From the IMG/VR virus record IMGVR_UViG_3300042541_001760, positions 186,001 through 250,000 of that record: DNA of 64,000 nt; one strand, given 5' to 3'. How positions within the stretch are numbered: position 1 is the first letter of the stretch; each line of letters begins with the position of its first letter. Below, one piece after another: positions 1,546-30,293 of the stretch. The notes beneath the pieces are model-generated. The model was given only the letters and a program-made list of their open reading frames with translations, made no database searches and was not told where the DNA came from. The translations under genes were made by a program, and so were the position numbers.

Positions 1546-2346
1546 ATGAAATATATTAATTTAAATTCAAAAAAAGGTTTAGTAAATTTATTCGCCGATT
1601 ACATAGTTAAAGAGTTTAGTCACAATACTATGATACAAGTTTCAGATTGTGGGGCATTCTTCTTAGTCAAAGGTAAAACAGATAAAGAAGAGTATGTTGA
1701 TTTAAACGAAATAAAGAAAACATTCTTAAGTGACAATAAAAACAATTATCAATTTTTAGGTTTAGAGAATATTAATATCATTGATATTATTGAGTATGAT
1801 ACTGAAATCCTACCTAAAGATAGATGGCATTCGTTTTATCCCACTGAGAGACCTATATACACTCAATCTGTTATAGATAGACACGAAGACCTGATTAACA
1901 CAATAAACTCGTTAAATGAGGTTAATGGTAGGTCTGTTATTGAATCTGAGGAGGAGGTTATCGGTTTTGATTATTATGAATACCCATCTATGATTATAAC
2001 ATCAGAATTTCCTTATGGTTATGGTTTGGATACAGGTAGATTGGGTTACTACTATTCTGAATATATTGTCAATCATTTGTTTAACATTACCAACTCATCA
2101 AGTATTGATTTTAGATTCTCAAGTCAGGTTGATGATGATATGGAAGTTAAAATAGACATATCTTTATATGATAGTTTATTACCTAACGAATATATTAAAT
2201 CTATGGTGTTGGATGTATTTAATTTTGATGTGTCCGAACTTAAAAATGAATTACAATCTTATGACTTGTTGGATGACTTAAAGGATCCTTTTGGTAAGAA
2301 GCCTTGGTTGGTTAAGGATATGATTGGGGATATTGTTGTTATTTAA
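1546..2346 (+). CDS. Degenerate S-adenosylmethionine synthetase (MetK)-like protein lacking catalytic motifs
   Basis: Segments FFLVKGKTDKEEYVDLNEI, FPYGYG and VLDVFNFD...PFGKKPWLVKD resemble recalled MetK N-, central and C-terminal motifs; GHPDK and GGGAFSGKD absent. Confidence 0.5.
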   Translation: MKYINLNSKKGLVNLFADYIVKEFSHNTMIQVSDCGAFFLVKGKTDKEEYVDLNEIKKTFLSDNKNNYQFLGLENINIIDIIEYDTEILPKDRWHSFYPTERPIYTQSVIDRHEDLINTINSLNEVNGRSVIESEEEVIGFDYYEYPSMIITSEFPYGYGLDTGRLGYYYSEYIVNHLFNITNSSSIDFRFSSQVDDDMEVKIDISLYDSLLPNEYIKSMVLDVFNFDVSELKNELQSYDLLDDLKDPFGKKPWLVKDMIGDIVVI

Positions 2347-2683
2347 ATTTATGATTCCAACGGTGGATATCGTATTTATAAGTCCATAAAGGTGTTACCT
2401 CCTTTAATTTGTAAACCTCATCCAACCATTTTTTTATAGTTGATTGGATATCTCCGTAGTTAAGATGAAATAATAATTCAATTTTCGACCAAATATCGTC
2501 ATTGTGAATATAAACACGCTCAGTTTTCTTATCGTATTCCATTAAAACCTGATTATTATCATTTACATAATATATTGAGTCAGGATAATCCTTATGTTTC
2601 TTTTGTGTTAAATTACCAAAGTGCTTGTTTAACCACTTGATAACAACCCTCTCTAACTGATGTTCATTTACTTGTATGTTCAT
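2339..2683 (-). CDS. Paralog family protein, copy A (MNIQVN-x-QLERVVIKWLN family)
   Basis: Clear similarity to 2694..3038, 3035..3403 and 6750..7061. Confidence 0.85.
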   Translation of the reverse strand: MNIQVNEHQLERVVIKWLNKHFGNLTQKKHKDYPDSIYYVNDNNQVLMEYDKKTERVYIHNDDIWSKIELLFHLNYGDIQSTIKKWLDEVYKLKEVTPLWTYKYDIHRWNHKFK

Positions 2684-2693
2684 ATTCTATTTT

Positions 2694-3038
2694 TCAATTT
2701 CTAAGTTCTTCCCAATTGAAAATGGATGCGTTACTGTTTCTGATTGGTCTCACACCCTTCAATTTGTAAGTATCTTCCAACCAAACCTCAATAATTGATT
2801 TGATGTCATTGTGTCCAATGTGAAATATATTTTCCAAATGTGACCAAATATCACCATAATGAATATAGACATATTCACTTAGTTTAATGTATTGAAGTAT
2901 AACATTATTACTAGAATCCACATAAAATACCACATTAGGAAAATCCTTATGTTTCTTTGGTGTTAAGTTACCTAAGCGTTTGTTTAACCACTTGATGACA
3001 ACTCTCTCCATTTGATTTCTATTTACCTGTACGTTCAT
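2694..3038 (-). CDS. Paralog family protein, copy B
   Basis: Shares N-terminal MN(V/I)QVN..QxERVVIKWLN and C-terminal WLxxxYKLxxV motifs. Confidence 0.85.
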   Translation of the reverse strand: MNVQVNRNQMERVVIKWLNKRLGNLTPKKHKDFPNVVFYVDSSNNVILQYIKLSEYVYIHYGDIWSHLENIFHIGHNDIKSIIEVWLEDTYKLKGVRPIRNSNASIFNWEELRN

Positions 3039-3403
3039 ATTCTATTTTTTAATTTATAGGTCTCCTCCAACCAAATAAGGCCATCCGGCCAATTGAAATC
3101 ATTATCCATTGGTCTTACTCCCTCCAATTTGTATGTCTCTTTCAACCATACCTTCATAATTGAATGAATTACATGATAGTTAAGGTGAAATAACGATTCA
3201 ACTTTTCCCCAAATATGATTATAATCGATATAAAAATTTTCATACTCCGGATTGTATTCCATCATAACCTTATCATTAGAATTTACGTAAAATACTGAGT
3301 CAGGATAATATTTATGTTTCTTTTGCGTTAAATTACCAAAGTGATTGTTTAACCACTTGATAACAACCCTCTCTAACTGATGTTTATTTACTTGTATGTT
3401 CAT
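3035..3403 (-). CDS. Paralog family protein, copy C
   Basis: Same family; WLxETYKL motif present twice; ATGA-coupled to both neighbours. Confidence 0.85.
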   Translation of the reverse strand: MNIQVNKHQLERVVIKWLNNHFGNLTQKKHKYYPDSVFYVNSNDKVMMEYNPEYENFYIDYNHIWGKVESLFHLNYHVIHSIMKVWLKETYKLEGVRPMDNDFNWPDGLIWLEETYKLKNRI

Positions 3404-3996
3404 TTAATTAATAATATTTTACCATAAATATCTTTATACCCACGATTAAACCCCTTATATACTATATGGTATACGTAAACATCTTCCTGACATATTTGAC
3501 CCTTATAAGTTCCATTCCATTGTTTATTAATATCATCACTTTCAAATATTAATTCACCCCATCTATTAAATATTGTAATATTAAACTTATCAACACCGAA
3601 TCCATAAGCCCCGAAAGTTTCGTTTAGATTGTCATCATTTGGTGTAAATGCGTTTGGGACATAGATGCTTAACTCAGGACACCCCTCAACTTTTACAATC
3701 ACTTCGGTTTGTGAGATACAATTACCATTTGTGTATTGAGCAACTATGGTATACTGACCTGGATCATCCCACCTAACAAATAAAGTATTATCGTTTAATC
3801 CTTGTGCGTTCACACTAGGTTCTACTATCCAACGACTTTGATAACCCGGTAATCCATCAACCCAATATTTTTTATCAATATACAATGTATCACATAAATT
3901 TATTATCTGAGGTTCGTTACGTATCTGTGTGTTTAATGAACCACTTAATAATAAAATAAAGACAATTAATATTGTTTTTAAATATGGGTATGACAT
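3400..3996 (-). CDS. Exported protein with Ig/PKD-like domain and T9SS type-B (gliding motility-associated, CHU_C) C-terminal sorting domain
   Basis: Signal peptide ending LNT|Q; C-terminus IYVPNAFTPNDDNLNETF...IFNRWGELIFES...WNGTYKG...VYVY...GKILLIK. Confidence 0.9.
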   Translation of the reverse strand: MSYPYLKTILIVFILLLSGSLNTQIRNEPQIINLCDTLYIDKKYWVDGLPGYQSRWIVEPSVNAQGLNDNTLFVRWDDPGQYTIVAQYTNGNCISQTEVIVKVEGCPELSIYVPNAFTPNDDNLNETFGAYGFGVDKFNITIFNRWGELIFESDDINKQWNGTYKGQICQEDVYVYHIVYKGFNRGYKDIYGKILLIK

Positions 3997-3997
3997 T

Positions 3998-4564
3998 TTA
4001 ATCTGTGTATATAACCGGTGTTGATGGTGGTGGTGTTATCGTTATTGACCCACTACCACTCATAGGGCATCCATTAGCATCTGTTGATGTGAATGTGATT
4101 GGGTAAACTCCTGTCGCTAATCCTGTTGCGTTAAATACCGATCCGGTAACACCAGTTCCGGCAAATACAGGATTAGTCCCAAGTGGATTGGATGTTAAGT
4201 TTATTGTTCCGTTTCCTTGACATAAGGCATCAACTATAACAACAGGTATTGTTGGTGGTAGTACGGTTATCGTTGCCGAACTAGTTGAACTACATAAACC
4301 AATAGTTTTGGTTATGGTAATTGTGTATGTCCCCGCAACAGACCAAGTGACTTGTATTTGGTCACCACTTGATATTGATGTAAATGGAACTGCTGGTACT
4401 ATACTAAAAGTATATGTCGCCAATGGGTCAATAACTTGGTCACCATAAACTTGAACATCGTTCAAACAATAAGTGTTGTTATTTGCCGAATTCGGTGTTG
4501 GTACTTGTCCGTAACCTAATAGGGTTACCAATAAAAATCCAAGAATAATTATAATCTTTTTCAT
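3998..4564 (-). CDS. Exported two-Ig/PKD-like-domain protein
   Basis: Signal peptide GYG|Q; VTWSVAGTYTIT and GTGVTG..F...G.YPITFT.TDANGC motifs typical of Bacteroidota surface proteins. Confidence 0.8.
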   Translation of the reverse strand: MKKIIIILGFLLVTLLGYGQVPTPNSANNNTYCLNDVQVYGDQVIDPLATYTFSIVPAVPFTSISSGDQIQVTWSVAGTYTITITKTIGLCSSTSSATITVLPPTIPVVIVDALCQGNGTINLTSNPLGTNPVFAGTGVTGSVFNATGLATGVYPITFTSTDANGCPMSGSGSITITPPPSTPVIYTD

Positions 4565-4565
4565 A

Positions 4566-5942
4566 TTAATTTGTGTAAACTGATACTGTTATACCACCCG
4601 GTGGTATGTTTATTGTTTTATTTATTGTTGTTGATGTACAAGGTCCGTTAATGGTTAATGAAACATTATAAGTCCCTGATAATAAATATGCGTGAGTTGG
4701 ATTTTGTTGTATTGAAGTTTGACCATCACCAAAATTCCAAAAATACGTATATAAGTTATTCTGATTAACACAATTGTTAGTTATCGTAGGTGACTGAAAT
4801 GATGCGGTGGTGCAACTTATGGTTGGGTTGGGTAATATGTATTGGGGTTGGACATAAAATGACGCAAAGTTAGGTAATCCGAATCTACCTGCCCTACTCA
4901 CAAGTGGTATGGATAAGTCCGAGTAGTTACACCCGACTCCATAAACATTGGGATTATTTATAACGGATAATGATGTATTATTCCTCGCAACATAAACCTT
5001 ACCATCAGGTCCTAATTGAATTGACCCTATGAAAGCGCCTGCGTTTGATACGACTCTACGGCTAGCCTGTATCTGTGCTTGAGTTCCCGCACATAAATCC
5101 CATTGTAATAACATACCTTGGTTTGTCCCACCATATAATATTCTACCGTCAGGCGAGAATTCACATCCATAGATACCCGTCTCGTTTGATAGGGTAAATC
5201 CCCCTGATGCGAAACCTGTGGATGGGTCAAAATTATGTAACTCAATCTTATTCATTCCATAGTGACACGCCGCCAACCTTCTTCCGTTTGGTGATGCCTT
5301 TAATTGTCCATAAGCGGATTGGGGTACTCCTGATACAACAGACCCGGATATTGACCAAGTAGTAATACTAGGGACACCAACATTATCCACCAACCAAGAG
5401 GTAAATACATTTGTATTCCAATCGTGTGATAAGACCCAAACATCAACATTATTACAATGTCTGACGGCACATAACTTTTCACAGGATGGTGTTTTTAGTT
5501 GGGTATTCTTTGTTGTGACCGCACCTAACCCCACACTTAAACTCATATCAACAATTGAGTAACATATACCATTAACTCCAGCATCGTTATCCGAAGTGAA
5601 GATATAATATATGTTGGGTTGATTTGGTTTCTGAACTATGACGGCTGATTGTGTGGATGAAACATCACCGAATAAACCAGTACCATTTGTCATAACCAAA
5701 TGGTTTTTATTCCAAACGGTAATCCCGTTGGTATAGAATAATAGATTACCCAAATTATCTGATATGGTTGCCACCCCTTCAATAGTGGTTAAGGCTCCAT
5801 TGGTTAAAGCAACAGGAGACCCTGAGTTAAAGGTTATCCCCGCATTTGTCCCAAAATACCAATTAGTACTCGGACCGGGTATTTGTGAATATCCGATAAC
5901 ATAAAGTAATGAAAATAATATTATAAGTTTTAACTTTATCAT
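4566..5942 (-). CDS. Exported beta-propeller plus PKD domain protein
   Basis: Signal peptide GYS|Q; NWYFG...EGVATISD..GNLLFYTNG...NGTGL.G..SSTQSA N-terminus; PKD motif YFWNFGDG...NPTHAY..SGTYNVSLT. Confidence 0.85.
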   Translation of the reverse strand: MIKLKLIILFSLLYVIGYSQIPGPSTNWYFGTNAGITFNSGSPVALTNGALTTIEGVATISDNLGNLLFYTNGITVWNKNHLVMTNGTGLFGDVSSTQSAVIVQKPNQPNIYYIFTSDNDAGVNGICYSIVDMSLSVGLGAVTTKNTQLKTPSCEKLCAVRHCNNVDVWVLSHDWNTNVFTSWLVDNVGVPSITTWSISGSVVSGVPQSAYGQLKASPNGRRLAACHYGMNKIELHNFDPSTGFASGGFTLSNETGIYGCEFSPDGRILYGGTNQGMLLQWDLCAGTQAQIQASRRVVSNAGAFIGSIQLGPDGKVYVARNNTSLSVINNPNVYGVGCNYSDLSIPLVSRAGRFGLPNFASFYVQPQYILPNPTISCTTASFQSPTITNNCVNQNNLYTYFWNFGDGQTSIQQNPTHAYLLSGTYNVSLTINGPCTSTTINKTINIPPGGITVSVYTN

Positions 5943-6607
5943 TCCTTAATACGAATGGTTAGACCAACGTCTAATCCTATCATATAAGTATTAAATGAAT
6001 TGTCAATAACTATTGGTGTTAAATTTGTTCTACCATAAACTGATGTAGTTAGTCCAACACCCTCAATTATATTCATATACAAACCACCTCTAACAAAAAC
6101 CCCTAAATAAGTTTTAACCGTTTTATAATCGTATATTTCAACATCATATGTAAAATCATTACGATTTGTTATTATCCCATCACCAAATATCATATTTAAA
6201 GATGGACCTATTTCAAAATATAAACTTTGACCAATGGATGGGTAGTATGTCAATAAGGGAGATATGGAAACACCATCTATTTGTATTGTCTTATCAATAT
6301 ACTTTAACTCATTAAAATTAACACCATTCGGTATGATTCTAATATCCTGATTTATTCTTGTTTTATTTGTCTCCAATTTAATACCCCAAAATTTATTCTG
6401 ATAATAACCATTCTCAAAATATCTCGCAAACGAAAAACCATATGAACTAGCATAGGTTATTCTTCTTTCATTTCTTAGATCGGTAAATGATGTGTTCGGT
6501 ATGTTTAATGTTGTAATCCCTCGATTAAAATTACCACTAATGGTATAGACTTGGGATAAGAGTGGGGACGACAGTAATACGCATAAAACCAGTAAAAACT
6601 TTTTCAT
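5939..6607 (-). CDS. Outer-membrane beta-barrel protein (PorT-like, about 8 strands)
   Basis: Signal peptide LLS|Q; amphipathic strands, YFEIGPSLNMI motif, terminal strand IGLDVGLTIRI; 222 aa. Confidence 0.65.
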   Translation of the reverse strand: MKKFLLVLCVLLSSPLLSQVYTISGNFNRGITTLNIPNTSFTDLRNERRITYASSYGFSFARYFENGYYQNKFWGIKLETNKTRINQDIRIIPNGVNFNELKYIDKTIQIDGVSISPLLTYYPSIGQSLYFEIGPSLNMIFGDGIITNRNDFTYDVEIYDYKTVKTYLGVFVRGGLYMNIIEGVGLTTSVYGRTNLTPIVIDNSFNTYMIGLDVGLTIRIKE

Positions 6608-6660
6608 AAGATATAGTATATGTTAGTTTAGTTGCCATTCGTAATACGCACTGATTTTAC

Positions 6661-6668
6661 TATAAATA
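6661..6668 (-). promoter_or_regulatory. Putative late promoter TATTTATA driving the 6607-to-2339 operon
   Basis: Exact motif 53 nt upstream of ATG 6607, just downstream of a terminator. Confidence 0.6.
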
Positions 6669-6680
6669 TCTTAAAAACAA

Positions 6681-6705
6681 AAAATCCACTAAAAAAGTGG
6701 ATTTT
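6681..6705 (-). terminator. Intrinsic terminator
   Basis: AAAATCCACT-AAAAA-AGTGGATTTT perfect 10-bp stem with flanking T-run on minus strand. Confidence 0.75.
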
Positions 6706-6749
6706 ATTATTTACTTTATTAAATGTTTTATTACATTAGGTGATTTTTA

Positions 6750-7061
6750 CTAATCATAAGTGGCACCAAAAACTTCTTGAACGTCAATATCGTATGTTTC
6801 GTACATCCATTTTGGGACTATAGTTCTAACATCAACATAAGTTAATTTAAACATATTAACCAAACTCATAAGAATATCATTATTCACATGTAAAATACCA
6901 TTATCAGTATTATAATCCATCATCTGTTTATTATTATGGTTAAAATAAAATACCGTATCGGTAAAATATGAAATCTCTTTTAGTGTTAAGTTACCGTAGT
7001 GTTTATTTAACCACTTGATAACTACTCTTTCCAATTGATGTTTATTTACTTGTATGTCCAT
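6750..7061 (-). CDS. Paralog family protein, copy D
   Basis: MDIQVNKHQLERVVIKWLNKHYGNLT N-terminus. Confidence 0.85.
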   Translation of the reverse strand: MDIQVNKHQLERVVIKWLNKHYGNLTLKEISYFTDTVFYFNHNNKQMMDYNTDNGILHVNNDILMSLVNMFKLTYVDVRTIVPKWMYETYDIDVQEVFGATYD

Positions 7062-7065
7062 AATG

Positions 7066-7073
7066 TATAAATA
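7066..7073 (-). promoter_or_regulatory. Putative late promoter TATTTATA
   Basis: Exact motif 4 nt upstream of ATG 7061. Confidence 0.55.
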
Positions 7074-7076
7074 CCA

Positions 7077-7361
7077 TTAAAGACCAAAATGTTCCTTAAT
7101 GATATTAACACCCTCATCAATCTCGTTATAATCTCTCTCAGGCGCATATAAGTGAGATACAGGTTCATCATCAGGTGATTCTACAATCATAAAAGACGGA
7201 ACAAAATCATTACCTGTTATCTCCTTGAACATCTCGTATTCGTCCTCGTGTTCGTGGATGTCCCTAACAAAATAGTTAATATTTTCCTCGTTCAACCGGT
7301 CTTTCATCATCTGACAAAATGGACACCCATCCATTGTGAACAGAATTAGTAGTTTATCCAT
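7077..7361 (-). CDS. Glutaredoxin/thioredoxin-fold protein
   Basis: FTMDGCPFC active site and downstream VP motif. Confidence 0.85.
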   Translation of the reverse strand: MDKLLILFTMDGCPFCQMMKDRLNEENINYFVRDIHEHEDEYEMFKEITGNDFVPSFMIVESPDDEPVSHLYAPERDYNEIDEGVNIIKEHFGL

Positions 7362-7668
7362 TTATAATTTTACTTGATAAGTCGATTATTTCTTTTATCT
7401 GCATAATTCCAACCTTATTAAAAACTTCTTCACCGCTTTTAAATCCTTTTATAGTGGGAACTCCTCTAACACCTAACTGCATAGTTAATTCTGAATCGGA
7501 ATCCACATTATATTTATACACACTTAAATTTGTAATTTGTGATGAAGCACTCTCCAACATTGGCATCATAACTTTACACGGACCACACCACGGGGCATAG
7601 CAATCCAATATGAAATCTTCCCCCTTTTTAATCTTTTCTCTTACTTGTTCTGCGTTTAATTCAATCAT
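7354..7668 (-). CDS. trxA: Thioredoxin
   Basis: APWCGPCK active site, GVRGVPT motif, 104 aa. Confidence 0.95.
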   Translation of the reverse strand: MIELNAEQVREKIKKGEDFILDCYAPWCGPCKVMMPMLESASSQITNLSVYKYNVDSDSELTMQLGVRGVPTIKGFKSGEEVFNKVGIMQIKEIIDLSSKIING

Positions 7669-10095: not shown

Positions 10096-11466
10096 TTAAT
10101 TATCAAGAAAAAAGTAACCATTACCTTGTGATATTAAATTTTCCCTAACCGATTCAGGTAAGGTTTCCTCTAACTTATCTCCTGAACCATAAATGTTAAG
10201 GAAGGTCAGGTCTTTTAAGTTTTCTATTGAACTTGGTAATGATTTTAATTGTTTGTTATTAGGTAGTATAAGATAACCTAAATTTGTTAGTTTTCCAAGT
10301 TCATCAGGTAATGATTTAACAATATTTTCTAATTGTAAAGTCGTTAAATTTGTAAATTCGCCTATTGATGCTGGAATGTCTATCGCAAGATCTTCTTTAG
10401 ATTTATTAATGAATGATAACATATCTATGTCTCTTGGTAAACTTTCAAACAATTCCTCAAAGCCATATAGAGCCACGAATTTACCCGCTGAACTATCAGG
10501 GTAAGTTATGTTAACTTGGTTCGTAGATTGATTAACCAATCCTTTTGCGAATTCAGGTTTGAAGTATTCTTTAAGGTCGGGTGCTTTATTATTTAAAAAA
10601 TCAACCAACTCAATTCTATGGTCTAATCTATCCATAAACTGATTAGATGGGAAGTGAAATTGGAATCTGTCTTGGGGTAATCCTGTTCTTCCTCCGACAG
10701 GTCCACCCTCATCGTTAGATAATAACACATAAAGAGGTCCGTCTTTAACATATCCCCTAAAATAACTTGAACTTGGTGGTGATGTACACCATCTTGATTC
10801 ACCCTTTTCGTAGTCATAATAACCACCATACCAAGATGCCGCTTCTTGACCTTTTTCACCCCCATCTGAAATCTTAACCACTGTATAGTTGTCTCCAACA
10901 TATTCAACGGTCGCACCAGGATGTGAAAAACCTTTTCTTTCTTTACGAATTTCTTTTTTAACTTCTGACTTAGCTAATTTATTCTTAATCTTCTCAGGTA
11001 GTTCAAAATTATTTAGGAATTTGAAAAGTTTAGTTGGTGTAAATTTATTGATATCTCTCCATACAACAGGAAAATATTGTTTGTATTTTGTGAATTTTTT
11101 AAGGTCATCTGTTAATTTAAACAAATCCTCCATAAATAAATCACGTGCTCTTTCAACACTACCTGAGTCGTCAGTTTCGGGACTCTCATAGTTCTTTAAC
11201 ATCCAATTAACATATTGACCCGGTTGAATCTTTTTTAAATTCTCAGGACTAAAATCCGCATCGTTAAAATCCGCAGGTTTTTTTGTGGTTGGATCGGCAA
11301 ATATGATATCTGCCAATTTATTTATATCCATTAAAGCTTTTGAGCCTTTACCGGGTATTACATCTTTCTTAGGTTTTGTATATTTGTCAATCAATACATC
11401 AAAACGACTTTGTTCCGTTAGAATATTACGTAACAATGTGTTTAATTTTATATTTTTAATTTTCAT
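10096..11466 (-). CDS. Protein with central WCTS domain and C-terminal leucine-rich repeats
   Basis: SRWCTS motif; IPASIGEFTNLTTLQL, LPDELGKLTNLGYLIL, LPSSIENLKDLTFLNI repeats. Confidence 0.85.
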   Translation of the reverse strand: MKIKNIKLNTLLRNILTEQSRFDVLIDKYTKPKKDVIPGKGSKALMDINKLADIIFADPTTKKPADFNDADFSPENLKKIQPGQYVNWMLKNYESPETDDSGSVERARDLFMEDLFKLTDDLKKFTKYKQYFPVVWRDINKFTPTKLFKFLNNFELPEKIKNKLAKSEVKKEIRKERKGFSHPGATVEYVGDNYTVVKISDGGEKGQEAASWYGGYYDYEKGESRWCTSPPSSSYFRGYVKDGPLYVLLSNDEGGPVGGRTGLPQDRFQFHFPSNQFMDRLDHRIELVDFLNNKAPDLKEYFKPEFAKGLVNQSTNQVNITYPDSSAGKFVALYGFEELFESLPRDIDMLSFINKSKEDLAIDIPASIGEFTNLTTLQLENIVKSLPDELGKLTNLGYLILPNNKQLKSLPSSIENLKDLTFLNIYGSGDKLEETLPESVRENLISQGNGYFFLDN

Positions 11467-11496: not shown

Positions 11497-13311
11497 TTAA
11501 TACCAAATATAAAAACCGGGACCTTCTTCTTTCATCCTTGCTCTTACTTCTTCGGGTATGATTATATCAGGATTAGATCCCTCCAATAGGATGAAATCTA
11601 ACTCTTCTAATTTTGCTAATGATTTGGGTAATGACTTTAGTCTAGGGTTGTTGGGTAATCCTAAAACAGATAACCTACTTAGATTACCAATTGATTCGGG
11701 TAACTCCTCAACAACGCCAGTCAAACTTAAATTCTCAAGATTACTAAATCTATCTATGTCGTTTGGTATATCTATTTTTATTGACCCATCTTTACTCTTA
11801 TTCTTTATTACTAACTCAGTGATGGTGTCAGGTAATGAATCAAAAAGTTCTTTTAATCCATATAGGGCAATGTATTTACCTTCGTTTGATGATGGTAACT
11901 CAATTACTGCTGAGTCCTTGAATACAAAATTGGTTGCGAACTTAGTTTTAAGGGATTCTTTTAGTTTGGCCATCATAGGTAAATTTAGTATGGCTATCTC
12001 ACCTTCACTTAAACTACCAATATTCTTGTTAGATAAAGCCTCAACTTTTTTCTTTAGGTAGTATTTCATTGTGTCAGAATCAGAGTTCCTAACTTGACCT
12101 GCGGTTAATTCGTGACCTAAAGCAATATATTTCTTTCTTAAATTTGGTGTTAGGCTATTGAATTGTTCATCACTTACTTTCCTATTAACAATCTCTAACC
12201 AATACTCAACCTCATTTTCATTAGCGAAAGTATCAAAGAGATTATCACCGACTTTTGAGTTTCTTATTTTATCTATAAGTACTTTTTCGTCAGATGTTAA
12301 TGGTTTTGGTTTGAATACGCCCTCCAATCCTTTTAATTTAGGTATTTTAGTTAATATCTCACTCCAAGGAATATTGTTATGACCTGAATATCTACCTGAG
12401 TTTGTACCATCCGCCAATGACATATCCCCATCAGGGTCAACCAATATAACAACCGCAAAGTTTACATCAGAATAATCCTTATCTTGGTCTATCACATAGT
12501 ATAATGTTCTCTCGTTGTCTAATCTATAGTTATAGAATAAGTTTGATGTTCCCTCACGAGATGTACACCAACTTCTACCATTCTTTAACTTAATACACTG
12601 GTCTCTCGTCTTTGGTTGGAATATTAATAAGTTATTCTCATTGTATACTTCCTCAATATCAGATACATCTGTTTTTGTTTCTGTGTCGTCGGATTTAACT
12701 GACGCATCAATATAATGTTCAAAATCTGTAAAACTTAGTGAGGTTGCCAATGGCATTTGCTCATATAACTGATTAAAGTTATCCAAGTACGCTTGAACAT
12801 AATACATTATTACATCTTCCGTTAGATTTGGATTCTCTTTCTTAAATTTCTCTGACAATATTTTTAGTAGAAACTTGGGGTAAGATTGGTCAATAACTTT
12901 TTGTAAATCCAAGAATTTATACTTGGTGATGTCCTTACCTTTACCGAATGCGTCCTCAATCTCCAAAAACTTTCTAATGGTTTTCTTAAGAGACACATTT
13001 TCAATACCCCCTTCTTTCTTTTTGAACTCCTTAAAAAGATCGGATTCTCTTTTTTGAGTTCTCTTTAAAGCAATAATGTTTTTTAATTCACTATATGAAT
13101 ATCTTGATAAATCTCTTTTCTCAACAGGTAACCCGTTTTTGTATTTTTCAAAATCGTCAATGTATCCACCTATGGTTTTTTCGTCATCCTTAGTATCTTG
13201 TAAAAATTTACCGATTAACTTCGCTTTTATTTTATCGGATACTTCTTTAAGTAACTTTTTAGGTAACGGGCTTTCAACCACAACGGACGATAATAAATTT
13301 ACTAACTTCAT
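11497..13311 (-). CDS. Paralogous WCTS-domain plus leucine-rich-repeat protein
   Basis: RSWCTS motif; LPESIGNLSRLSVLGL, LPKSLAKLEELDFILL repeats; C-terminal region aligns with 10096..11466. Confidence 0.85.
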   Translation of the reverse strand: MKLVNLLSSVVVESPLPKKLLKEVSDKIKAKLIGKFLQDTKDDEKTIGGYIDDFEKYKNGLPVEKRDLSRYSYSELKNIIALKRTQKRESDLFKEFKKKEGGIENVSLKKTIRKFLEIEDAFGKGKDITKYKFLDLQKVIDQSYPKFLLKILSEKFKKENPNLTEDVIMYYVQAYLDNFNQLYEQMPLATSLSFTDFEHYIDASVKSDDTETKTDVSDIEEVYNENNLLIFQPKTRDQCIKLKNGRSWCTSREGTSNLFYNYRLDNERTLYYVIDQDKDYSDVNFAVVILVDPDGDMSLADGTNSGRYSGHNNIPWSEILTKIPKLKGLEGVFKPKPLTSDEKVLIDKIRNSKVGDNLFDTFANENEVEYWLEIVNRKVSDEQFNSLTPNLRKKYIALGHELTAGQVRNSDSDTMKYYLKKKVEALSNKNIGSLSEGEIAILNLPMMAKLKESLKTKFATNFVFKDSAVIELPSSNEGKYIALYGLKELFDSLPDTITELVIKNKSKDGSIKIDIPNDIDRFSNLENLSLTGVVEELPESIGNLSRLSVLGLPNNPRLKSLPKSLAKLEELDFILLEGSNPDIIIPEEVRARMKEEGPGFYIWY

Positions 13312-25777: not shown

Positions 25778-26395
25778 ATGAAAAACATATTATTTTTAGA
25801 TGAACAAATTAAAAGAATCTACGAAGTGTCATATACTATTTCGGAATCAAGAGGTAAGAATAGACAGAACATTATTAATGATGTGGTAATAGAATCCTTA
25901 AAATCCGATATATACTATAATGATTGTGTGTTTAAAAAAGAAGTTATAATCCCCGGAACAAAATTACTATGGGGTAAATACTTTCCTGTTGATATATGCG
26001 TATATAAAGATAATACTCTAATTGAGATTATTTTAAATAAGGCGCCTTCATCAAATATAAAGCAAAATAGAATTAATTCACTTAATGGTATTAATTCAGA
26101 CATAACAAGATTATCTAAATTAGAAAATATAAAAATTTCTTTAATTAATTTTTTACCTAAGATATCCCCTTTCTTTAAAAGAGATGAAAGTATTAAATCT
26201 TTTGAGAAAAATGAGCCTTTTTTCTTATCTACTTCTGGCGCCTTTTATAAATTCGATGTTGATGAAATATATGTTACTTTTGAAATTAATAATTTATATA
26301 AATGTAATTCAAAAGTTGATGTTAGAAATTTATTTTTGGTGAATCCTATAAAAAATGTGAATTTAATTCAAAAAAATTATAAAAGTTTAACTTAA
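25778..26395 (+). CDS. Putative type II restriction endonuclease
   Basis: Adjacent to and convergent with an MTase; PVD...E...K.P.SN.KQN..N segment; shares the very AT-rich composition of the MTase. Confidence 0.45.
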   Translation: MKNILFLDEQIKRIYEVSYTISESRGKNRQNIINDVVIESLKSDIYYNDCVFKKEVIIPGTKLLWGKYFPVDICVYKDNTLIEIILNKAPSSNIKQNRINSLNGINSDITRLSKLENIKISLINFLPKISPFFKRDESIKSFEKNEPFFLSTSGAFYKFDVDEIYVTFEINNLYKCNSKVDVRNLFLVNPIKNVNLIQKNYKSLT

Positions 26396-27840
26396 TAAGT
26401 ATAACTCTTTATAGTTGTGGTGGATACACTCAACCAAACATCATCAGATTTACTTTTATCTGATAAAATTTTATTATTTAACTCACAAAAACTATGGAAA
26501 TTACCACTTGAGATTATTTTAACGAACTCTTCTTTCATTCCTTTTTTAATATCGATTAACAATCCAGACATAACTAGACAATTTTCTTTTTCGGGTATTT
26601 CAATATAATGTATGTTTCTTGATCTTAGGAATGTTAATGGTAGTATTATGTAATCACCTTTTTTTTCTTTTAGTAATCCTTGCCTTCTACCGTAAGCATA
26701 CCAAGTATCATAATTTGACGTTTTTCCTTTATCTCTTGATAATAAATCATTTTTTCTACTTAAAAGATAATCATAACAAAATGGATAATCTCGTTTAAGG
26801 TTATTTTCATTTATTATTTCACCATTTACGTAAGGATATATGATGTATTTATACTCGCTAAAATTTCTACTTGTGGTTGCTTTTATATATTTTTTACAAA
26901 TGTTTTTTTCTATTTTAAAACCATTCTTATAACAAAAATCCTCGTCATTATAATCCATTTTAAAAACATCGTCCTTTATTGTTGCCAATCCACCAGAATA
27001 ATAATTAACCATATCACTTAGTTTATTGTTACCGTATTTTATTTCCTCAAATATCCATTTGTTAAGAGATAAATCTTTTTTGTTTTTAATAATATTTAAT
27101 TTATTTGTTTCATATAAAACAACATCAGAAATATTTTCTTCACATATAACTATTGATGTGTAGGTTGATATATTATCCCATACTTTTTCATTCTTAAAAT
27201 CATAAATATATGATACTCGTTCTTTTATTATTTCTCTTATAAAAGACCCTGATTTATTTTTTATAAAAGAATTTGGTATAATAAAACCTACTTTTTTTGA
27301 ATGTATTAATGATTTTTCCAAAAAAGCATAATATAAATCAATATTACCTAATGAAATTGATTTTAACTCTCCTTTTAACGAATTTAAATAATCTTTGTTT
27401 ATATTTTGAATTCGGACATATGGTGGATTTCCAAGTATAACATCATAATCCATTTTCTGTATTAGAAAATCACCTTGTATAATATTATTAAATGATAATT
27501 CACCATCATGTTTAAAATATTCAAAATACCCATTTAATAGTAATTTAAATTCATTAAGAAAATCTTTATTTATATCATAACAGAATAAATTATTATTTAC
27601 AAAATTGGCAATTTCCTTTATAGAATAATCTTTTTGTCTGAAAAACTCTAATAGTGAAAAAACGAAAACTCCTTTACCGACACTTGGCTCACAGATAATT
27701 TCATTTATTTTTGGATTAATTCTATTAATAATAATATCACATATGGTTTTGTCTGTGAAAACAACACCATTTTCTTTAATGGATTTTTTATCTTTCTGAT
27801 TAAAGTAACTTGAATTACTTATTATTTTGTCTAAATTCAT
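26392..27840 (-). CDS. Eco57I/TaqI-like N6-adenine DNA methyltransferase
   Basis: GVVFT, EPSVGKGVF (motif I), GNPPYVR (motif IV), DLYYAFLE, GFIIPNS. Confidence 0.9.
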   Translation of the reverse strand: MNLDKIISNSSYFNQKDKKSIKENGVVFTDKTICDIIINRINPKINEIICEPSVGKGVFVFSLLEFFRQKDYSIKEIANFVNNNLFCYDINKDFLNEFKLLLNGYFEYFKHDGELSFNNIIQGDFLIQKMDYDVILGNPPYVRIQNINKDYLNSLKGELKSISLGNIDLYYAFLEKSLIHSKKVGFIIPNSFIKNKSGSFIREIIKERVSYIYDFKNEKVWDNISTYTSIVICEENISDVVLYETNKLNIIKNKKDLSLNKWIFEEIKYGNNKLSDMVNYYSGGLATIKDDVFKMDYNDEDFCYKNGFKIEKNICKKYIKATTSRNFSEYKYIIYPYVNGEIINENNLKRDYPFCYDYLLSRKNDLLSRDKGKTSNYDTWYAYGRRQGLLKEKKGDYIILPLTFLRSRNIHYIEIPEKENCLVMSGLLIDIKKGMKEEFVKIISSGNFHSFCELNNKILSDKSKSDDVWLSVSTTTIKSYTY

Positions 27841-27854
27841 AGATTATTTATTTT

Positions 27855-27862
27855 TATAAATA
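27855..27862 (-). promoter_or_regulatory. Putative late promoter TATTTATA
   Basis: Exact motif 14 nt upstream of MTase ATG. Confidence 0.5.
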
Positions 27863-27878
27863 TTAGTTTAAACCACTA

Positions 27879-30293
27879 TTATTGAGTAATCCTACTAATA
27901 TTATTTTCTTTTGTGATTCTTATTACGTTGTCCGCCCAATTAGTGATTAGAGGATTGTGAGTTATGACGAATATCTTCTCAAAATAATCCTTAATCTTAA
28001 CGAAGAATTCATATACCATATCTAAGTTGTCATTGGATATTTTACCGAACACCTCATCCATAACATTTATATTAGGTTTTGGTAATGAACATACCTTACT
28101 TAATACCGATCTTAATGCTAGTGAAGCAATCGTCTTTTCATACCCACTACCTGATGACATCAACTTCTCTACCTGAGTATCGTTATCAATCATAATAAAC
28201 TCAACTTCATTCTTATCGTTGATTCTGACTTCAAGTTTGAACTGACAACTATCTTCCAATAATCTTTGTAACTCAGAATTAATAATTGGTATCATTGTTT
28301 TCATAATCAACTTTGATATACCGTTCTTACCATAGACCTCCAAATAAAGTTTATAATACTTTTCTCTTTCTGACTCTTCGGATATCTTTTGAATAAGTGT
28401 CATATTTTCCACAATCTTATTATTAAGAGTTTGAGTTTGATATGTTAGATTCGTTATCTCCCTATCTATCTTATTCTCTTCCATATTAAGTTCGTCCATA
28501 CGGATGTTCGCCTTAATTATCTGACTTTCAATTTTAAGGTTCTGTTCAATCTTGGTTTGAATTTGATTATACCGGTTTAACTTGTCCTTAATCGCATCAA
28601 TTTTAAGATTATTACTTTCAATATTAACCTCGTATTTCTCTTTGATTAACTTGTTTTTCTCGTATTCATTAAACTCTTTCTTAAGTTGAACGAAACCCTT
28701 CTCTTTGCCCGATAAATCAAGCATTAACTCGGTTATTTGACCATAATGCTGGTTATATGAGGCAAGTTCCCCCAATTTTGTCTTGGTAATTTCCGCATTT
28801 AATAACTCAATTCCGCAGTGTTCACACTTGATTCCACCCGATACAGATTTCGCCAACTCATTAAGGTTTGCGATTTTGGTTTCCGTTTCAATCTTCTTAA
28901 CAAGTTGTTCGTTATACTCTTCCTTTACCTTGTCGTGTTTGTCCTCGTGATAAAATGAGGATGGTTCAACAACATTAATCTTGGATAGGTCTTCAATTAA
29001 CTTTTTATTGGTATAGTCAATCTGTGTGATGTCCTCGTTAAGTTTGGTTGGATTAAGGATGGCAATTGCGTTGTCAATGTCATTATGTTTCTGAGAAACT
29101 AATCCATCTCTATAGTCCTGACCCTTCTTAATTCTTCCCTTAACATCCTCCAATTGTTCTTGGTGTTTTATTAGGGTTTCATTGTTTTCGGTAATCTTTG
29201 TCTTGGCCGATTCAATATCCTGTTTCAATTGTTCGGTGTTATAAACATTGGACAACATAGATTTTGAATATTTACTATACAAATCTTTACCTATCTCCTC
29301 TTTTTTCTTTAGAGATTCCAAACCAAGAAACCTTGATAATACCTGACCCCTTGCGGTTGGTTTGGCGTCAATTAAATCCTCCAAATTAGATCCTGTGGTT
29401 AGAATGGTTGTTAAGAAGTCGTCCATCTCACCGATTGATGTTTTGATAAACTTTTCTGTCTCAACTCTTTGTTCCCCCGTGAAATTCTGTAAACTTCCGT
29501 CGGACAACTTTTTAAAGAAGTCCAACGTAGTTTTTACATTCCATTCACCGGCTTTTGACATTTTTCTCTCAATGGTTCTGATAATCAAATAGTTATCACC
29601 ATCAATCATAATATCACCACGAACTGACACCTTGTTCTTATCTGTAAATCTATTAAAGATTTCTTCTGCCTTTTGCGTCTTTGTTGTCGTGTTAAAGAAT
29701 AGGAATAGTAATAAGTCAACGGTAAGGACGGTCTTACCCCCAAAATTAGGTGGATTTGATTCTACAACGGTAATACCATTACATAAGTCAAAATCAATCA
29801 CCTGATCCTCACCATACGATAAGAAATTGGAGAACTCTATCTTTTTAACAAACCACTTCTTAAATGGTGTTACTTCGGACTGGTCTAATACCAATTCATT
29901 CTCAACTTGGGCATCAATTCTCAATACCTCCGGTAGATAATCCTCTGCCGATTTTGAGATTAGAAAGTTCTTCATCAACTCCTGTTGATAATTTTTATCC
30001 AAGATGTTAAACGATATGTCAACCGATTGAGTCGTATCCTCCGATGTCTTAACCTTAGTTATAACATTAACATTATTTGAAGCGTATTTTTTTTGGAAGT
30101 ATTGTTTTACACTTTTGATTTTCTCTTGTGTGAAATTCTCAGGTGCATCTTCCCACACCACTTTGACGTAGGGATTCTCCAATTCGGATATATCCAAATT
30201 ATGTTTCATGTTTTCGTAATTAAAGTTCTTGGGCGGATTGAATAAGTCCAGTGTCTTCCGTGTCACCAGATGGTGTTGTTTTGAGTTCCTCAA
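27879..30293 (-). CDS. sbcC: SbcC/Rad50/gp46-like recombination ATPase (probable start 30209)
   Basis: IEFSNFLSYG, GGKT Walker A, coiled coil with CEHC hook, MSSGSGYE signature, VMDEVF Walker B, VITHN. Confidence 0.9.
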   Translation of the reverse strand: MRNSKQHHLVTRKTLDLFNPPKNFNYENMKHNLDISELENPYVKVVWEDAPENFTQEKIKSVKQYFQKKYASNNVNVITKVKTSEDTTQSVDISFNILDKNYQQELMKNFLISKSAEDYLPEVLRIDAQVENELVLDQSEVTPFKKWFVKKIEFSNFLSYGEDQVIDFDLCNGITVVESNPPNFGGKTVLTVDLLLFLFFNTTTKTQKAEEIFNRFTDKNKVSVRGDIMIDGDNYLIIRTIERKMSKAGEWNVKTTLDFFKKLSDGSLQNFTGEQRVETEKFIKTSIGEMDDFLTTILTTGSNLEDLIDAKPTARGQVLSRFLGLESLKKKEEIGKDLYSKYSKSMLSNVYNTEQLKQDIESAKTKITENNETLIKHQEQLEDVKGRIKKGQDYRDGLVSQKHNDIDNAIAILNPTKLNEDITQIDYTNKKLIEDLSKINVVEPSSFYHEDKHDKVKEEYNEQLVKKIETETKIANLNELAKSVSGGIKCEHCGIELLNAEITKTKLGELASYNQHYGQITELMLDLSGKEKGFVQLKKEFNEYEKNKLIKEKYEVNIESNNLKIDAIKDKLNRYNQIQTKIEQNLKIESQIIKANIRMDELNMEENKIDREITNLTYQTQTLNNKIVENMTLIQKISEESEREKYYKLYLEVYGKNGISKLIMKTMIPIINSELQRLLEDSCQFKLEVRINDKNEVEFIMIDNDTQVEKLMSSGSGYEKTIASLALRSVLSKVCSLPKPNINVMDEVFGKISNDNLDMVYEFFVKIKDYFEKIFVITHNPLITNWADNVIRITKENNISRITQ

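What the first reader, a model, noticed from the sequence alone, without database searches (positions are those of the whole stretch)
2339..7061. Four paralogous small genes with conserved 5' ends bracket the T9SS cassette
Seen: copies A, B and C are in tandem and copy D lies upstream. The first 103 nt of A and C differ at only 5 positions, while their 3' parts diverge much more. Copy C has a duplicated WLxETYKL segment and is ATGA-coupled to the CTD gene. Inference: the conserved 5' blocks could act as recombination handles for cassette shuffling or gene conversion, and the T9SS cassette may have been captured between copies. The variable C-terminal parts suggest diversifying effectors.
Basis: partly seen in the sequence, partly recalled or inferred. 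Interest (0 to 1): 0.6.

Follow-up and report, generated by a model that had tools for sequence, protein, structure and literature searches.

The report
Phage gene family with swappable 5' module
The four small genes belong to a 16-copy family of unknown function in a 261-kb lake phage, whose first ~70-100 bases and whose remainder have separate recombination histories, while their position on both sides of the secretion-gene cassette looks incidental.

Summary
Four intact minus-strand paralogs lie at 2339-2683 (A), 2694-3038 (B), 3035-3403 (C) and 6750-7061 (D). A and C differ at 5 of their first 103 nt. C carries two WLxETYKL boxes and overlaps the T9SS CTD gene by ATGA.

They are 4 of 16 copies, in four tandem arrays, in a 261-kb IMG/VR phage record from lake water. 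The family is phage-only and unannotated (over 1,000 clusters at 50% identity), with a confident α/β fold that matches no solved structure.

Within this genome the 5' conservation is mainly at the protein level (pN 0.16 against 0.36; pS 0.49 against 0.51). The 5' block nevertheless has its own history. In a related phage (G001) all six copies share a different N-terminal block, while their bodies pair with individual copies here (AU test p = 4e-12). Body dS between the two phages is 0.3-0.65, against about 0.9 to over 2 for flanking genes.

Close relatives gain and lose whole copies. One crossover maps inside the 5' block (D) and one inside the 3' box (copy A indel).

Copies upstream/downstream of the cassette number 1/3, 2/2 and 3/0 in three relatives. 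More distant relatives have neither copies nor cassette at this site. Capture of the cassette between copies is therefore not supported. Protein function remains unknown.

The parts
2339..2683 (-). Copy A (114 aa). It is a mosaic. Its first 103 nt are 95% identical to C. Its middle (alignment nt 142-195) is identical at 33 consecutive polymorphic sites to a copy about 68 kb away (genome 257167-257484). Window 2345-2695, which holds this whole unit, is absent from relatives L017, L018 and L019 and from one lake contig.
2694..3038 (-). Copy B (114 aa). Its ortholog in L017 gives dN/dS 0.51. Its tail (2694-2715) is a degenerate, frame-shifted second box.
3035..3403 (-). Copy C (122 aa). It is ATGA-coupled to the CTD gene upstream and to B downstream. 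Box 1 lies at 3125-3148 and an in-frame box 2 at 3050-3073.
6750..7061 (-). Copy D (103 aa). It is chimeric relative to L017. Its upstream flank and first ~45 nt match L017's 126-aa copy, and the rest matches L017's 102-aa copy. Its body is only 69-86% identical to L017, while the flanks are 97-100% identical.
6959..7061 (-). 5' block of D. The equivalent blocks are 2581-2683 (A), 2936-3038 (B) and 3301-3403 (C). The block encodes N-terminal helix residues 3-22 and includes the nearly invariant island GTTATCAAGTGGTT, with rare codons fixed across the copies.
2684..2715 (-). B-to-A junction (degenerate box 2 plus the spacer AAAAATAGAAT). It is nearly identical to the C-to-B junction at 3039-3073. 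The crossover that distinguishes the A-plus and A-minus forms lies in this box.
5939..6607 (-). 222-aa protein with a signal peptide. A language-model search places it with Bacteroidota outer-membrane beta-barrel proteins (score 0.97-0.98). It is the first gene of the cassette.
4566..5942 (-). 458-aa secreted protein with a PKD domain. It has more than 3,300 homologs of similar length, including ones on bacterial (Bacteroidota) contigs.
3998..4564 (-). 188-aa protein with a signal peptide and a weak PKD/Ig-like match.
3400..3996 (-). 198-aa protein with a T9SS type B C-terminal sorting domain (Pfam CHU_C 2.8e-15; TIGR04131 2.1e-14).
6681..6705 (-). Terminator-like hairpin (10-bp stem followed by a T run) between D and the cassette. 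It suggests that D is transcribed separately from cassette+C+B+A.

Best explanation
A, B, C and D are members of a 16-copy, phage-specific family of small (about 100-125 aa) cytoplasmic α/β proteins. The copies sit in tandem arrays in the variable regions of a 261-kb freshwater phage whose host is probably a Bacteroidota bacterium.

The family turns over by unequal homologous recombination between repeat units. Crossovers fall in its two conserved DNA islands: the 5' block, and the TGGTTGGARGAGACTTAYAAATT box that recurs at the 3' end or junction of units.

The first ~70-100 nt (with the short upstream junction) and the rest of the gene have different histories. The 5' module encodes the N-terminal helix, is specific to each phage lineage, and is homogenised among the copies of one genome by gene conversion or module replacement. 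The bodies move between arrays and between phage lineages.

Within this genome the 5' conservation is maintained mostly by purifying selection on the helix. The A-C near-identity is one short, fairly recent conversion tract.

The T9SS cassette is a separate occupant of the same variable site, and its bracketing by copies is incidental.

Shown: family size, mosaic histories, copy gain and loss, and crossover positions. Inferred: the conversion mechanism. The protein function is a guess (about 35%): an intracellular host-interaction or anti-defence binder with a shared N-terminal docking helix.
For: There are 16 intact copies in four arrays.

Within the genome, pN is 0.16 in the 5' block against 0.36 in the rest, with pS 0.49 against 0.51. 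Rare codons are nevertheless fixed in the block: AAG at codon 16 in 16/16 copies (genome-wide use 0.23), and ATC at codon 15 in 13/16 (genome-wide use 0.11).

In the 5'-block tree the six G001 copies form a clade with 100/99 support. In the body tree they are interspersed with G000 copies, and forcing them into one clade is rejected (ΔlnL 79.5, p-AU 4e-12).

Between G000 and G001, body pS is 0.25-0.43 and 5'-block pS is 0.78-0.95, against 0.51-0.86 for eight flanking genes.

The three G001 copies next to the cassette differ at only 2-11 positions from -15 to +75, although their bodies are 62-91% identical.

For the D chimera, informative sites match L017's 126-aa copy 10:3 up to about nt 45 and its 102-aa copy 15:0 afterwards.

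The copy A indel junction lies in box 2, and the A-less form recurs in an independent lake metagenome.

A shares 33 consecutive polymorphic sites with a distant copy (global P = 0.003).

The AF2 model has pLDDT 87.6, with helix 3-22 at pLDDT above 90.
Against: Only two informative relatives (L017 and G001) cover the locus, and both are partial contigs.

The best cross-genome body pairs were picked from 96 comparisons.

The A-C tract alone does not survive Bonferroni correction (0.14).

High pS in the 5' block among G000 copies shows that homogenisation is not ongoing at a high rate in this genome.

Selection for a shared N-terminal helix could add to the pattern. It cannot easily produce the same roughly 12 substitutions in parallel in six copies.

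The function is untested. No family, fold or complex search gave a lead.
Confidence: 0.72

Rival explanations
1. The 5' block is a lineage-specific functional tag rather than a recombination by-product. It could be a docking, oligomerisation or capsid-targeting helix, as in T4 internal proteins, or a shared translation-initiation or regulatory sequence. Under this view, selection to match one phage-specific partner keeps all copies of a genome alike, and the bodies are interchangeable cargo.
For: The block type is uniform within a genome and differs between lineages.

The first 18 nt and the ATCAAGTGGTTA island keep rare codons.

The motif TATTTATAnATTATG abuts the start codon of four copies and of three unrelated genes.

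Against: AF2 places helix 3-22 inside the fold at pLDDT above 90, not as a detachable peptide.

Glu11, which could resemble a cleavage site, is missing in the G001 type.

There is no conserved RNA structure: -4.9 kcal/mol and no compensatory pairs.

Synonymous divergence in the block among G000 copies is as high as elsewhere.

The complex prediction for A+C gave no verdict.

Even under this view, recombination is still needed to spread the block among copies.
Confidence: 0.3
2. One reading: D and C act as direct repeats flanking the T9SS cassette. Recombination between their 5' blocks captured the cassette, and can excise it or move it between arrays.
For: D and C are direct repeats about 77% identical over their first 102 nt.

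The site is a hot spot. More distant relatives have glutaredoxin next to the 266-aa gene with nothing, or one unrelated ORF, in between.

Recombination between flanking repeats is known to excise gene mini-circles in T4-type phages (PMC2839356).
Against: G001 has the cassette with three copies upstream and none downstream.

A lake contig joins glutaredoxin directly to the 458-aa gene, with no copy upstream.

No cassette-free form with a single hybrid D/C copy was found. The joints 2555->6979 and 3148->6979 are out of register, have 29-49-nt sides, and are best read as other family copies.

A homologous three-gene module sits in a bacterial chromosome without family copies.

Cassette GC3 is phage-like.
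Confidence: 0.1
3. There is no recombination signal at all. The 5' similarity is purely purifying selection on a conserved helix, and the A-C near-identity is chance or recent duplication.
For: Within the genome, pS is equal in the 5' block and in the rest (0.49 against 0.51), with pN more than halved.

The same-codon fraction at identical residues is 0.71 against 0.67.

The A-C excess is 0.14 after Bonferroni correction.
Against: Tree incongruence with AU p = 4e-12.

Body dS is below the genome background while 5' dS is at or above it.

The crossover in D is mapped.

Copy number varies among relatives that are about 95% identical.

The GENECONV-like tract has global P = 0.003.
Confidence: 0.05

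Closest known systems
PeSL (promoter-early stem-loop) cassettes of T4-type phages (Arbiol et al. 2010, PMC2839356; Comeau et al. 2014, PMC4122927)
   Same: Short conserved repeats are scattered through hyperplastic regions. Recombination between neighbouring repeats explains insertions, deletions and replacements of small ORFan genes between closely related phages.
   Different: Here the repeat is coding (the first ~70-100 nt of a paralog family plus a 3' box), not an intergenic promoter-terminator. Promoter-like sites are not enriched and there is only one terminator-like hairpin. Mini-circles were not tested.
T4 internal proteins sharing a capsid-targeting sequence (PMC3012670)
   Same: Small, diverse, fast-evolving phage proteins that share only a conserved N-terminal segment and are encoded in variable loci.
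   Different: The T4 sequence is a roughly 10-residue cleaved peptide. Here the conserved part is a 20-residue helix predicted to be part of the fold. Packaging and cleavage are untested, and there is no sequence similarity.
Partial (segmental) concerted evolution of tandem multigene families by interlocus gene conversion (for example PMC2720389, PMC3966223)
   Same: A stretch that is more similar between paralogs of one genome than between orthologs, with mosaic divergence along the gene and unequal crossover changing copy number.
   Different: It occurs in a virus. The homogenised stretch is a discrete N-terminal module, and the remainder appears to be exchanged between viral lineages.
T9SS type B CTD cargo genes of Bacteroidota (CHU_C / TIGR04131)
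   Same: The 198-aa gene carries the sorting domain above both curated cut-offs. The neighbouring genes encode secreted PKD/Ig-like proteins and an outer-membrane barrel-like protein.
   Different: It is encoded by a phage. The barrel-like protein is not a recognisable PorP/SprF family member (no NCBIfam or Pfam hit).

Membership tests
Multigene family under segmental concerted evolution | A region is more similar among paralogs of one genome than between orthologs, and trees from that region and from the rest of the gene disagree | tested here: met
   5'-block tree: the G001 copies form a clade (100/99). Body tree: monophyly of G001 copies is rejected at p-AU 4e-12. Mean 5' identity is 0.74-0.78 within a genome against 0.57 between genomes.
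Multigene family under segmental concerted evolution | Copy number changes by unequal crossover, leaving chimeric units | tested here: met
   D is a chimera of two L017 copies. The A unit is present or absent with its junction in box 2.
PeSL-type regulatory cassette | Strong sigma-70-like early promoter plus stem-loop terminator in the intergenic space beside each variable ORF | tested here: not met
   55 promoter-like sites against 46.7 +/- 7.2 expected. The only convincing terminator-like hairpin in the region lies between D and the cassette; the copies overlap or are 10 nt apart.
PeSL-type regulatory cassette | Indels between close relatives have their end points in the repeated motif | tested here: met
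   Crossovers map in the 5' block (D) and in box 2 (A). This matches how PeSLs work, not what they are made of.
T4-like internal protein with capsid-targeting sequence | Short N-terminal targeting peptide ending in a prohead-protease site (L/I-x-E, from general knowledge of T4 gp21) | tested here: not met
   The motif Q-L-E at residues 9-11 has Leu at P2, not P3. Glu11 is present in 11 of 16 copies and absent from the G001 type. The helix is part of the predicted fold.
T4-like internal protein with capsid-targeting sequence | The protein is packaged in the virion and ejected | not testable with these tools
   Needs virion proteomics.
T9SS type B cargo (198-aa gene) | N-terminal signal peptide plus a C-terminal CHU_C / TIGR04131 domain above the curated cut-off | tested here: met
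   Pfam 56.6 bits against a cut-off of 27, and NCBIfam 53.4 bits against 35. The N-terminus is hydrophobic.
Any described protein family or fold (paralog family) | Significant match in Pfam, PHROGs, NCBIfam, PADLOC, PDB sequences or PDB folds | tested here: not met
   There was no hit above threshold. Foldseek against PDB gave best E = 0.16. VIA-align gave best Z = 4.5. Only uncharacterised uncultured-phage proteins match in BFVD and the ESM Atlas.

The most novel reading that the evidence does not exclude
The family is a phage 'address tag plus cargo' system. The N-terminal helix would be a lineage-specific tag that docks every copy to one phage-specific partner, for example a capsid or ejection component or a shared host-takeover hub. 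The bodies would be interchangeable effector modules that co-infecting lake phages trade by recombination at the tag boundary and at the 3' box. This would be a viral counterpart of polymorphic effector systems with a conserved delivery domain.
Probability: 0.18. Interest if true: 0.8.

Novelty: new variant of a known kind. Interest (0 to 1): 0.5.

Why it matters
Large phages carry many arrays of small orphan genes whose evolution and roles are poorly understood. This locus gives a clean, statistically supported case in which one gene family is split into a lineage-specific 5' module and an exchangeable body, with crossover points mapped. The result extends the 'conserved motif as recombination handle' idea, known from intergenic PeSLs of T4-type phages, to a coding module in an uncultured freshwater phage. 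It also yields a testable prediction: the N-terminal helix has a common, phage-specific partner. Finally, it warns that repeats flanking a cargo cassette need not have delivered it.

Tried and rejected
Searches that found nothing:
- Pfam, PHROGs, NCBIfam and PADLOC scans of the copies gave nothing above threshold.
- A precomputed PF27906 tag on one homolog (P0088) could not be reproduced with the local Pfam copy.
- Foldseek against PDB, VIA-align wide and PDB sequence profiles gave no meaningful match.
- tblastn against 50,697 deposited phage genomes gave no match.
- Pfam scans of ten longer, multi-repeat relatives gave no informative domain.

Tests without a usable answer:
- The complex prediction for A+C gave no verdict, so it is evidence neither for nor against binding.
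- The consensus RNA fold of the -20..+90 regions of all 16 copies was -4.9 kcal/mol with no compensatory pairs, so an RNA element is not supported.

Rejected arguments:
- Raised cassette GC (0.38-0.43) as a sign of recent foreign origin. GC3 is 0.22-0.31, which is phage-like.
- The lake-contig joints 2555->6979, 3148->6979, 2346->3111 and 7063->2745 as cassette deletions. They come from single short contigs with 29-53-nt sides, are out of register, and are most simply other family copies or the L017-type arrangement.

Not possible:
- A whole-record search of the 147,875-bp L017 contig, because the record is not held.
- Single-protein locus scans with the 222-aa and 566-aa proteins found no relatives; the 266-aa protein found only one near-identical contig (L038), adding no distant relative.
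Full report
**Observation.** The window is bases 186001-250000 of a 261,052-bp IMG/VR virus record (linear; CheckV estimate 89% complete). The minus strand carries four intact paralogous ORFs:
- D, 6750-7061 (103 aa)
- C, 3035-3403 (122 aa)
- B, 2694-3038 (114 aa)
- A, 2339-2683 (114 aa)

A and C differ at 5 of their first 102-103 nt (95.1% identity) and are 70% identical over the rest. C contains two WLxETYKL boxes, at 3125-3148 and 3050-3073. Its start codon overlaps the stop codon of the 198-aa gene as ATGA. The description is therefore correct.

**Cassette between D and C.** Four tightly packed genes lie between D and C.
- A 222-aa protein with a signal peptide. A language-model search groups it with Bacteroidota outer-membrane beta-barrel proteins.
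- A 458-aa protein with a PKD domain.
- A 188-aa Ig/PKD-like protein.
- A 198-aa protein with a T9SS type B sorting domain: CHU_C 2.8e-15 and TIGR04131 2.1e-14.

A terminator-like hairpin at 6681-6705 separates D from the cassette. The cassette genes and C, B and A overlap one another or are separated by at most 10 nt.

**Family size and nature.** A profile of the four copies finds 16 copies in the genome, all intact and all on the minus strand, in four arrays:
- six at genome 156415-158486
- two at 176930-177624
- the four in this finding
- four at 256765-258146

The arrays lie among accessory and replication genes: a DNA methylase, SmpB, a NUDIX protein and a gp32-like protein. The family is large. 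The word-based search gave 363 hits. An exhaustive profile search gave 1,070 cluster representatives at E <= 1e-3. All hits are unnamed. Atlas and BFVD neighbours are uncultured tailed-phage proteins, and no deposited phage genome has a match.

AlphaFold2 on the 16-copy alignment gives a confident model (mean pLDDT 87.6). It has a helix at residues 3-22, four strands, two helices, a strand, and a lower-confidence C-terminal helix formed by the second box. No solved structure matches above noise, and no Pfam, PHROG, NCBIfam or PADLOC family matches. The proteins have no signal peptide.

**Why the 5' ends are conserved within this genome.** The N-terminal 26 residues are conserved in all 16 copies. 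Over all 120 pairs, the median proportion of synonymous differences is the same in codons 1-34 as in the rest (0.49 against 0.51). Non-synonymous differences are less than half as frequent (0.16 against 0.36). The bulk of the conservation is therefore protein-level constraint on the N-terminal helix.

Some nucleotide-level signal remains. Rare codons are fixed in the block: AAG at codon 16 in 16 of 16 copies (genome-wide use 0.23), ATC at codon 15 in 13 of 16 (0.11), and C-ending His/Tyr at codon 21 in 14 of 14.

The A-C pair is the outlier. Its 5' pS is 0.12, against 0.51 in the rest of the two genes. The rate-corrected P is 1.1e-3, or 0.14 after correction for 120 pairs. A and C are sisters in the 5' tree at 96/94. 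A is a mosaic in another respect too: its middle shares 33 consecutive polymorphic sites with the copy at genome 257167-257484 (global permutation P = 0.003).

**The 5' block has its own history.** A related phage contig, G001 (IMG/VR UViG 3300032092_000054, 48.5 kb), has the same gene order around the locus. All six of its family copies carry a different N-terminal block, MDIIVDRPQLVRTALLYLNMNF-like instead of MDIQVNKxQLERVVIKWLNKHY-like. Their bodies nevertheless pair with individual copies of this genome at 78-85% nt identity for four of the six (71-72% for the other two). For example, L028:6862-7209 pairs with genome 157434-157775, even though the two sit in non-syntenic arrays.

- A maximum-likelihood tree of codons 1-34 puts the six G001 copies in one clade (100/99).
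- The tree of the bodies intersperses them with G000 copies.
- Forcing G001 monophyly on the bodies costs 79.5 log-likelihood units (p-AU 4e-12).

Between the two phages, synonymous divergence of eight flanking genes is high (pS 0.51-0.86; dS 0.86 to saturation). The best body pairs have pS 0.25-0.43 (dS 0.30-0.65), and the 5' blocks have pS 0.78-0.95. The bodies have therefore been exchanged between lineages more recently than the genomes split. The 5' blocks are as old as the split or older, and are uniform within each genome.

In G001 the homogenisation is visible at the DNA level. From -15 to +75, the three copies beside the cassette differ at 2-11 positions, while their bodies are 62-91% identical.

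Across 118 diverse representatives, the N-terminal 26 positions are only moderately more conserved than the rest (1.97 against 2.55 bits). Within this genome the gap is much larger (0.59 against 1.65 bits).

**Copy turnover and crossover points.** Three near-identical relatives were compared: L017 (a 147,875-bp JGI contig), L018 and L019, all about 95% identical and colinear with the window. They keep the cassette, C and B but lack A. L017, the only one of the three whose contig reaches D's position, also keeps D.

The missing stretch is one exact unit, window 2345-2695. Its junction lies in the degenerate second box at the gene's 3' end. The same 351-nt skip appears in a contig of an independent lake-water metagenome.

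L017 has an extra 126-aa copy upstream of D. Informative sites show that the window's D matches that copy in its upstream flank and first ~45 nt (10:3). It then matches L017's 102-aa copy (0:15 in the next 55 columns). This places a crossover in the GTTATCAAGTGG island of the 5' block.

D's body is 69-86% identical to L017's, while the flanks are 97-100% identical. D's dS is 0.40, against 0.05-0.15 for most nearby genes.

The box recurs in several forms, so it behaves as DNA-level repeat material:
- in frame in C
- after the stop codon of the copy at genome 257167-257484
- out of frame in one G001 copy
- as a 36-nt exact repeat in L017's 126-aa copy

**The cassette and the 'bracketing'.** The number of copies upstream/downstream of the cassette is 1/3 here, 2/2 in L017 and 3/0 in G001. 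One lake contig, 87-92% identical, joins the glutaredoxin gene to the 458-aa gene through 20 unrelated bases, with neither D nor the 222-aa gene.

In more distant relatives (contigs of 282 kb and 154 kb), the glutaredoxin gene abuts the homolog of the 266-aa gene, or is separated from it by one unrelated 178-aa ORF. Neither copies nor cassette are present at the site. One of these phages carries a family copy elsewhere, near its NUDIX gene. The site is therefore a variable region that holds both occupants in this clade.

A homologous 462/190/167-aa module (53% identity for the large protein) lies in a 4.2-Mb bacterial contig next to RadC and ArdC-N genes, with no family copies nearby.

The cassette's raised GC reflects its amino-acid composition, since GC3 is 0.22-0.31. 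Nothing shows that the copies captured or moved the cassette.

**Selection on the variable parts.** Against L017, B and D have dN/dS of 0.51 and 0.54, and C has two non-synonymous and no synonymous changes. Neighbouring genes range from 0.03 to 0.24, apart from the replaced thioredoxin allele. Body pairs between G000 and G001 give 0.33-0.78. The family evolves faster than its neighbours, but diversifying selection is not demonstrated.

**Mechanism and comparison with known systems.** The best-supported picture is a tandem multigene family that evolves by unequal crossover and segmental conversion, using its own conserved coding islands as recombination sites. This works like the PeSL cassettes of T4-type phages, where recombination between short conserved motifs explains indels and replacements of ORFans and produces mini-circles (PMC2839356; PMC4122927). 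It is not a PeSL, however: there is no promoter-terminator unit.

The shared N-terminal segment on diverse small proteins recalls T4 internal proteins with their capsid-targeting sequence (PMC3012670). The helix here is predicted to be part of the fold, and no conserved cleavage motif exists. An RNA element in the 5' region is not supported. A test of A-C binding gave no verdict.

**Ecology.** The stretch is found in lake-water and freshwater metagenomes from 24 studies, 2016-2025. Only contigs were available, so read-level junction frequencies could not be measured.

**Verdict.** Of the interpretation:
- the gene-conversion / recombination-handle part is supported, in a modified form
- the cassette-capture part is not supported
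- the effector part remains open

This is a new variant of a known kind of phage genome plasticity, in an orphan family of unknown function.

Noticed in passing
L017:4606-5271, with the thioredoxin gene at L017:5276-5599 (window 7354-7668): L017 carries a GIY-YIG endonuclease gene between the 115-aa gene and thioredoxin that this window lacks. The adjacent thioredoxin allele is highly diverged (dS ~1, dN 0.55), while surrounding genes are about 95% identical. This looks like allele replacement linked to a homing endonuclease.
   Followed up: partly
genome 176298-176732 (L036:8298-8732): The phage encodes a full-length SmpB (Pfam 8e-47), the tmRNA partner protein, next to the two-copy array. 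A NUDIX gene lies on the other side of the array.
   Followed up: no
genome 102674, 137413, 141362, and upstream of four family copies (including window 7062-7076): The motif TATTTATAnATTATG directly abuts the start codon of seven genes, four of them family copies. It may be a phage promoter or initiation signal that gives very short leaders.
   Followed up: partly
window 4566-5942 and 3998-4564, with orthologs in L028: The 458-aa and 188-aa cassette proteins end in similar C-termini (…VSVYTN and …VIYTD), and this is conserved in the G001 orthologs. Each of the three secreted proteins has its own signal peptide, but only the last has a T9SS sorting domain.
   Followed up: no
L039:4825-8470 (4.2-Mb bacterial contig): The bacterial homolog of the three-gene secreted module sits beside RadC and ArdC-N-like genes and other small unannotated ORFs. 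This suggests that there, too, it lies in a mobile element or prophage.
   Followed up: no
window 10096-11466 and 11497-13311: Two adjacent large paralogous proteins with C-terminal leucine-rich repeats share a conserved central RSWCTS-containing region. They are conserved in all relatives examined.
   Followed up: no
genome 257077-257166 (outside the window): The 90-nt spacer after the copy at 257167-257484 holds a second copy of that gene's own variant of the box (21 of 21 nt identical, including its unusual TCT codon). This indicates a recent short duplication or an intra-unit conversion.
   Followed up: partly
window 26001-28000 and 52789-58992: There is a GC trough (0.23) around a 482-aa ORF, and a 2,067-aa ORF further on. 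Neither was examined.
   Followed up: no
L021, L022, L024, L025, L026 (IMG/VR contigs): Arrays equivalent to the four-copy array at genome 256765-258146 show different copy sets in other lake phage contigs (three or four copies, with one replaced or added). Turnover is therefore not confined to the array in this finding.
   Followed up: partly
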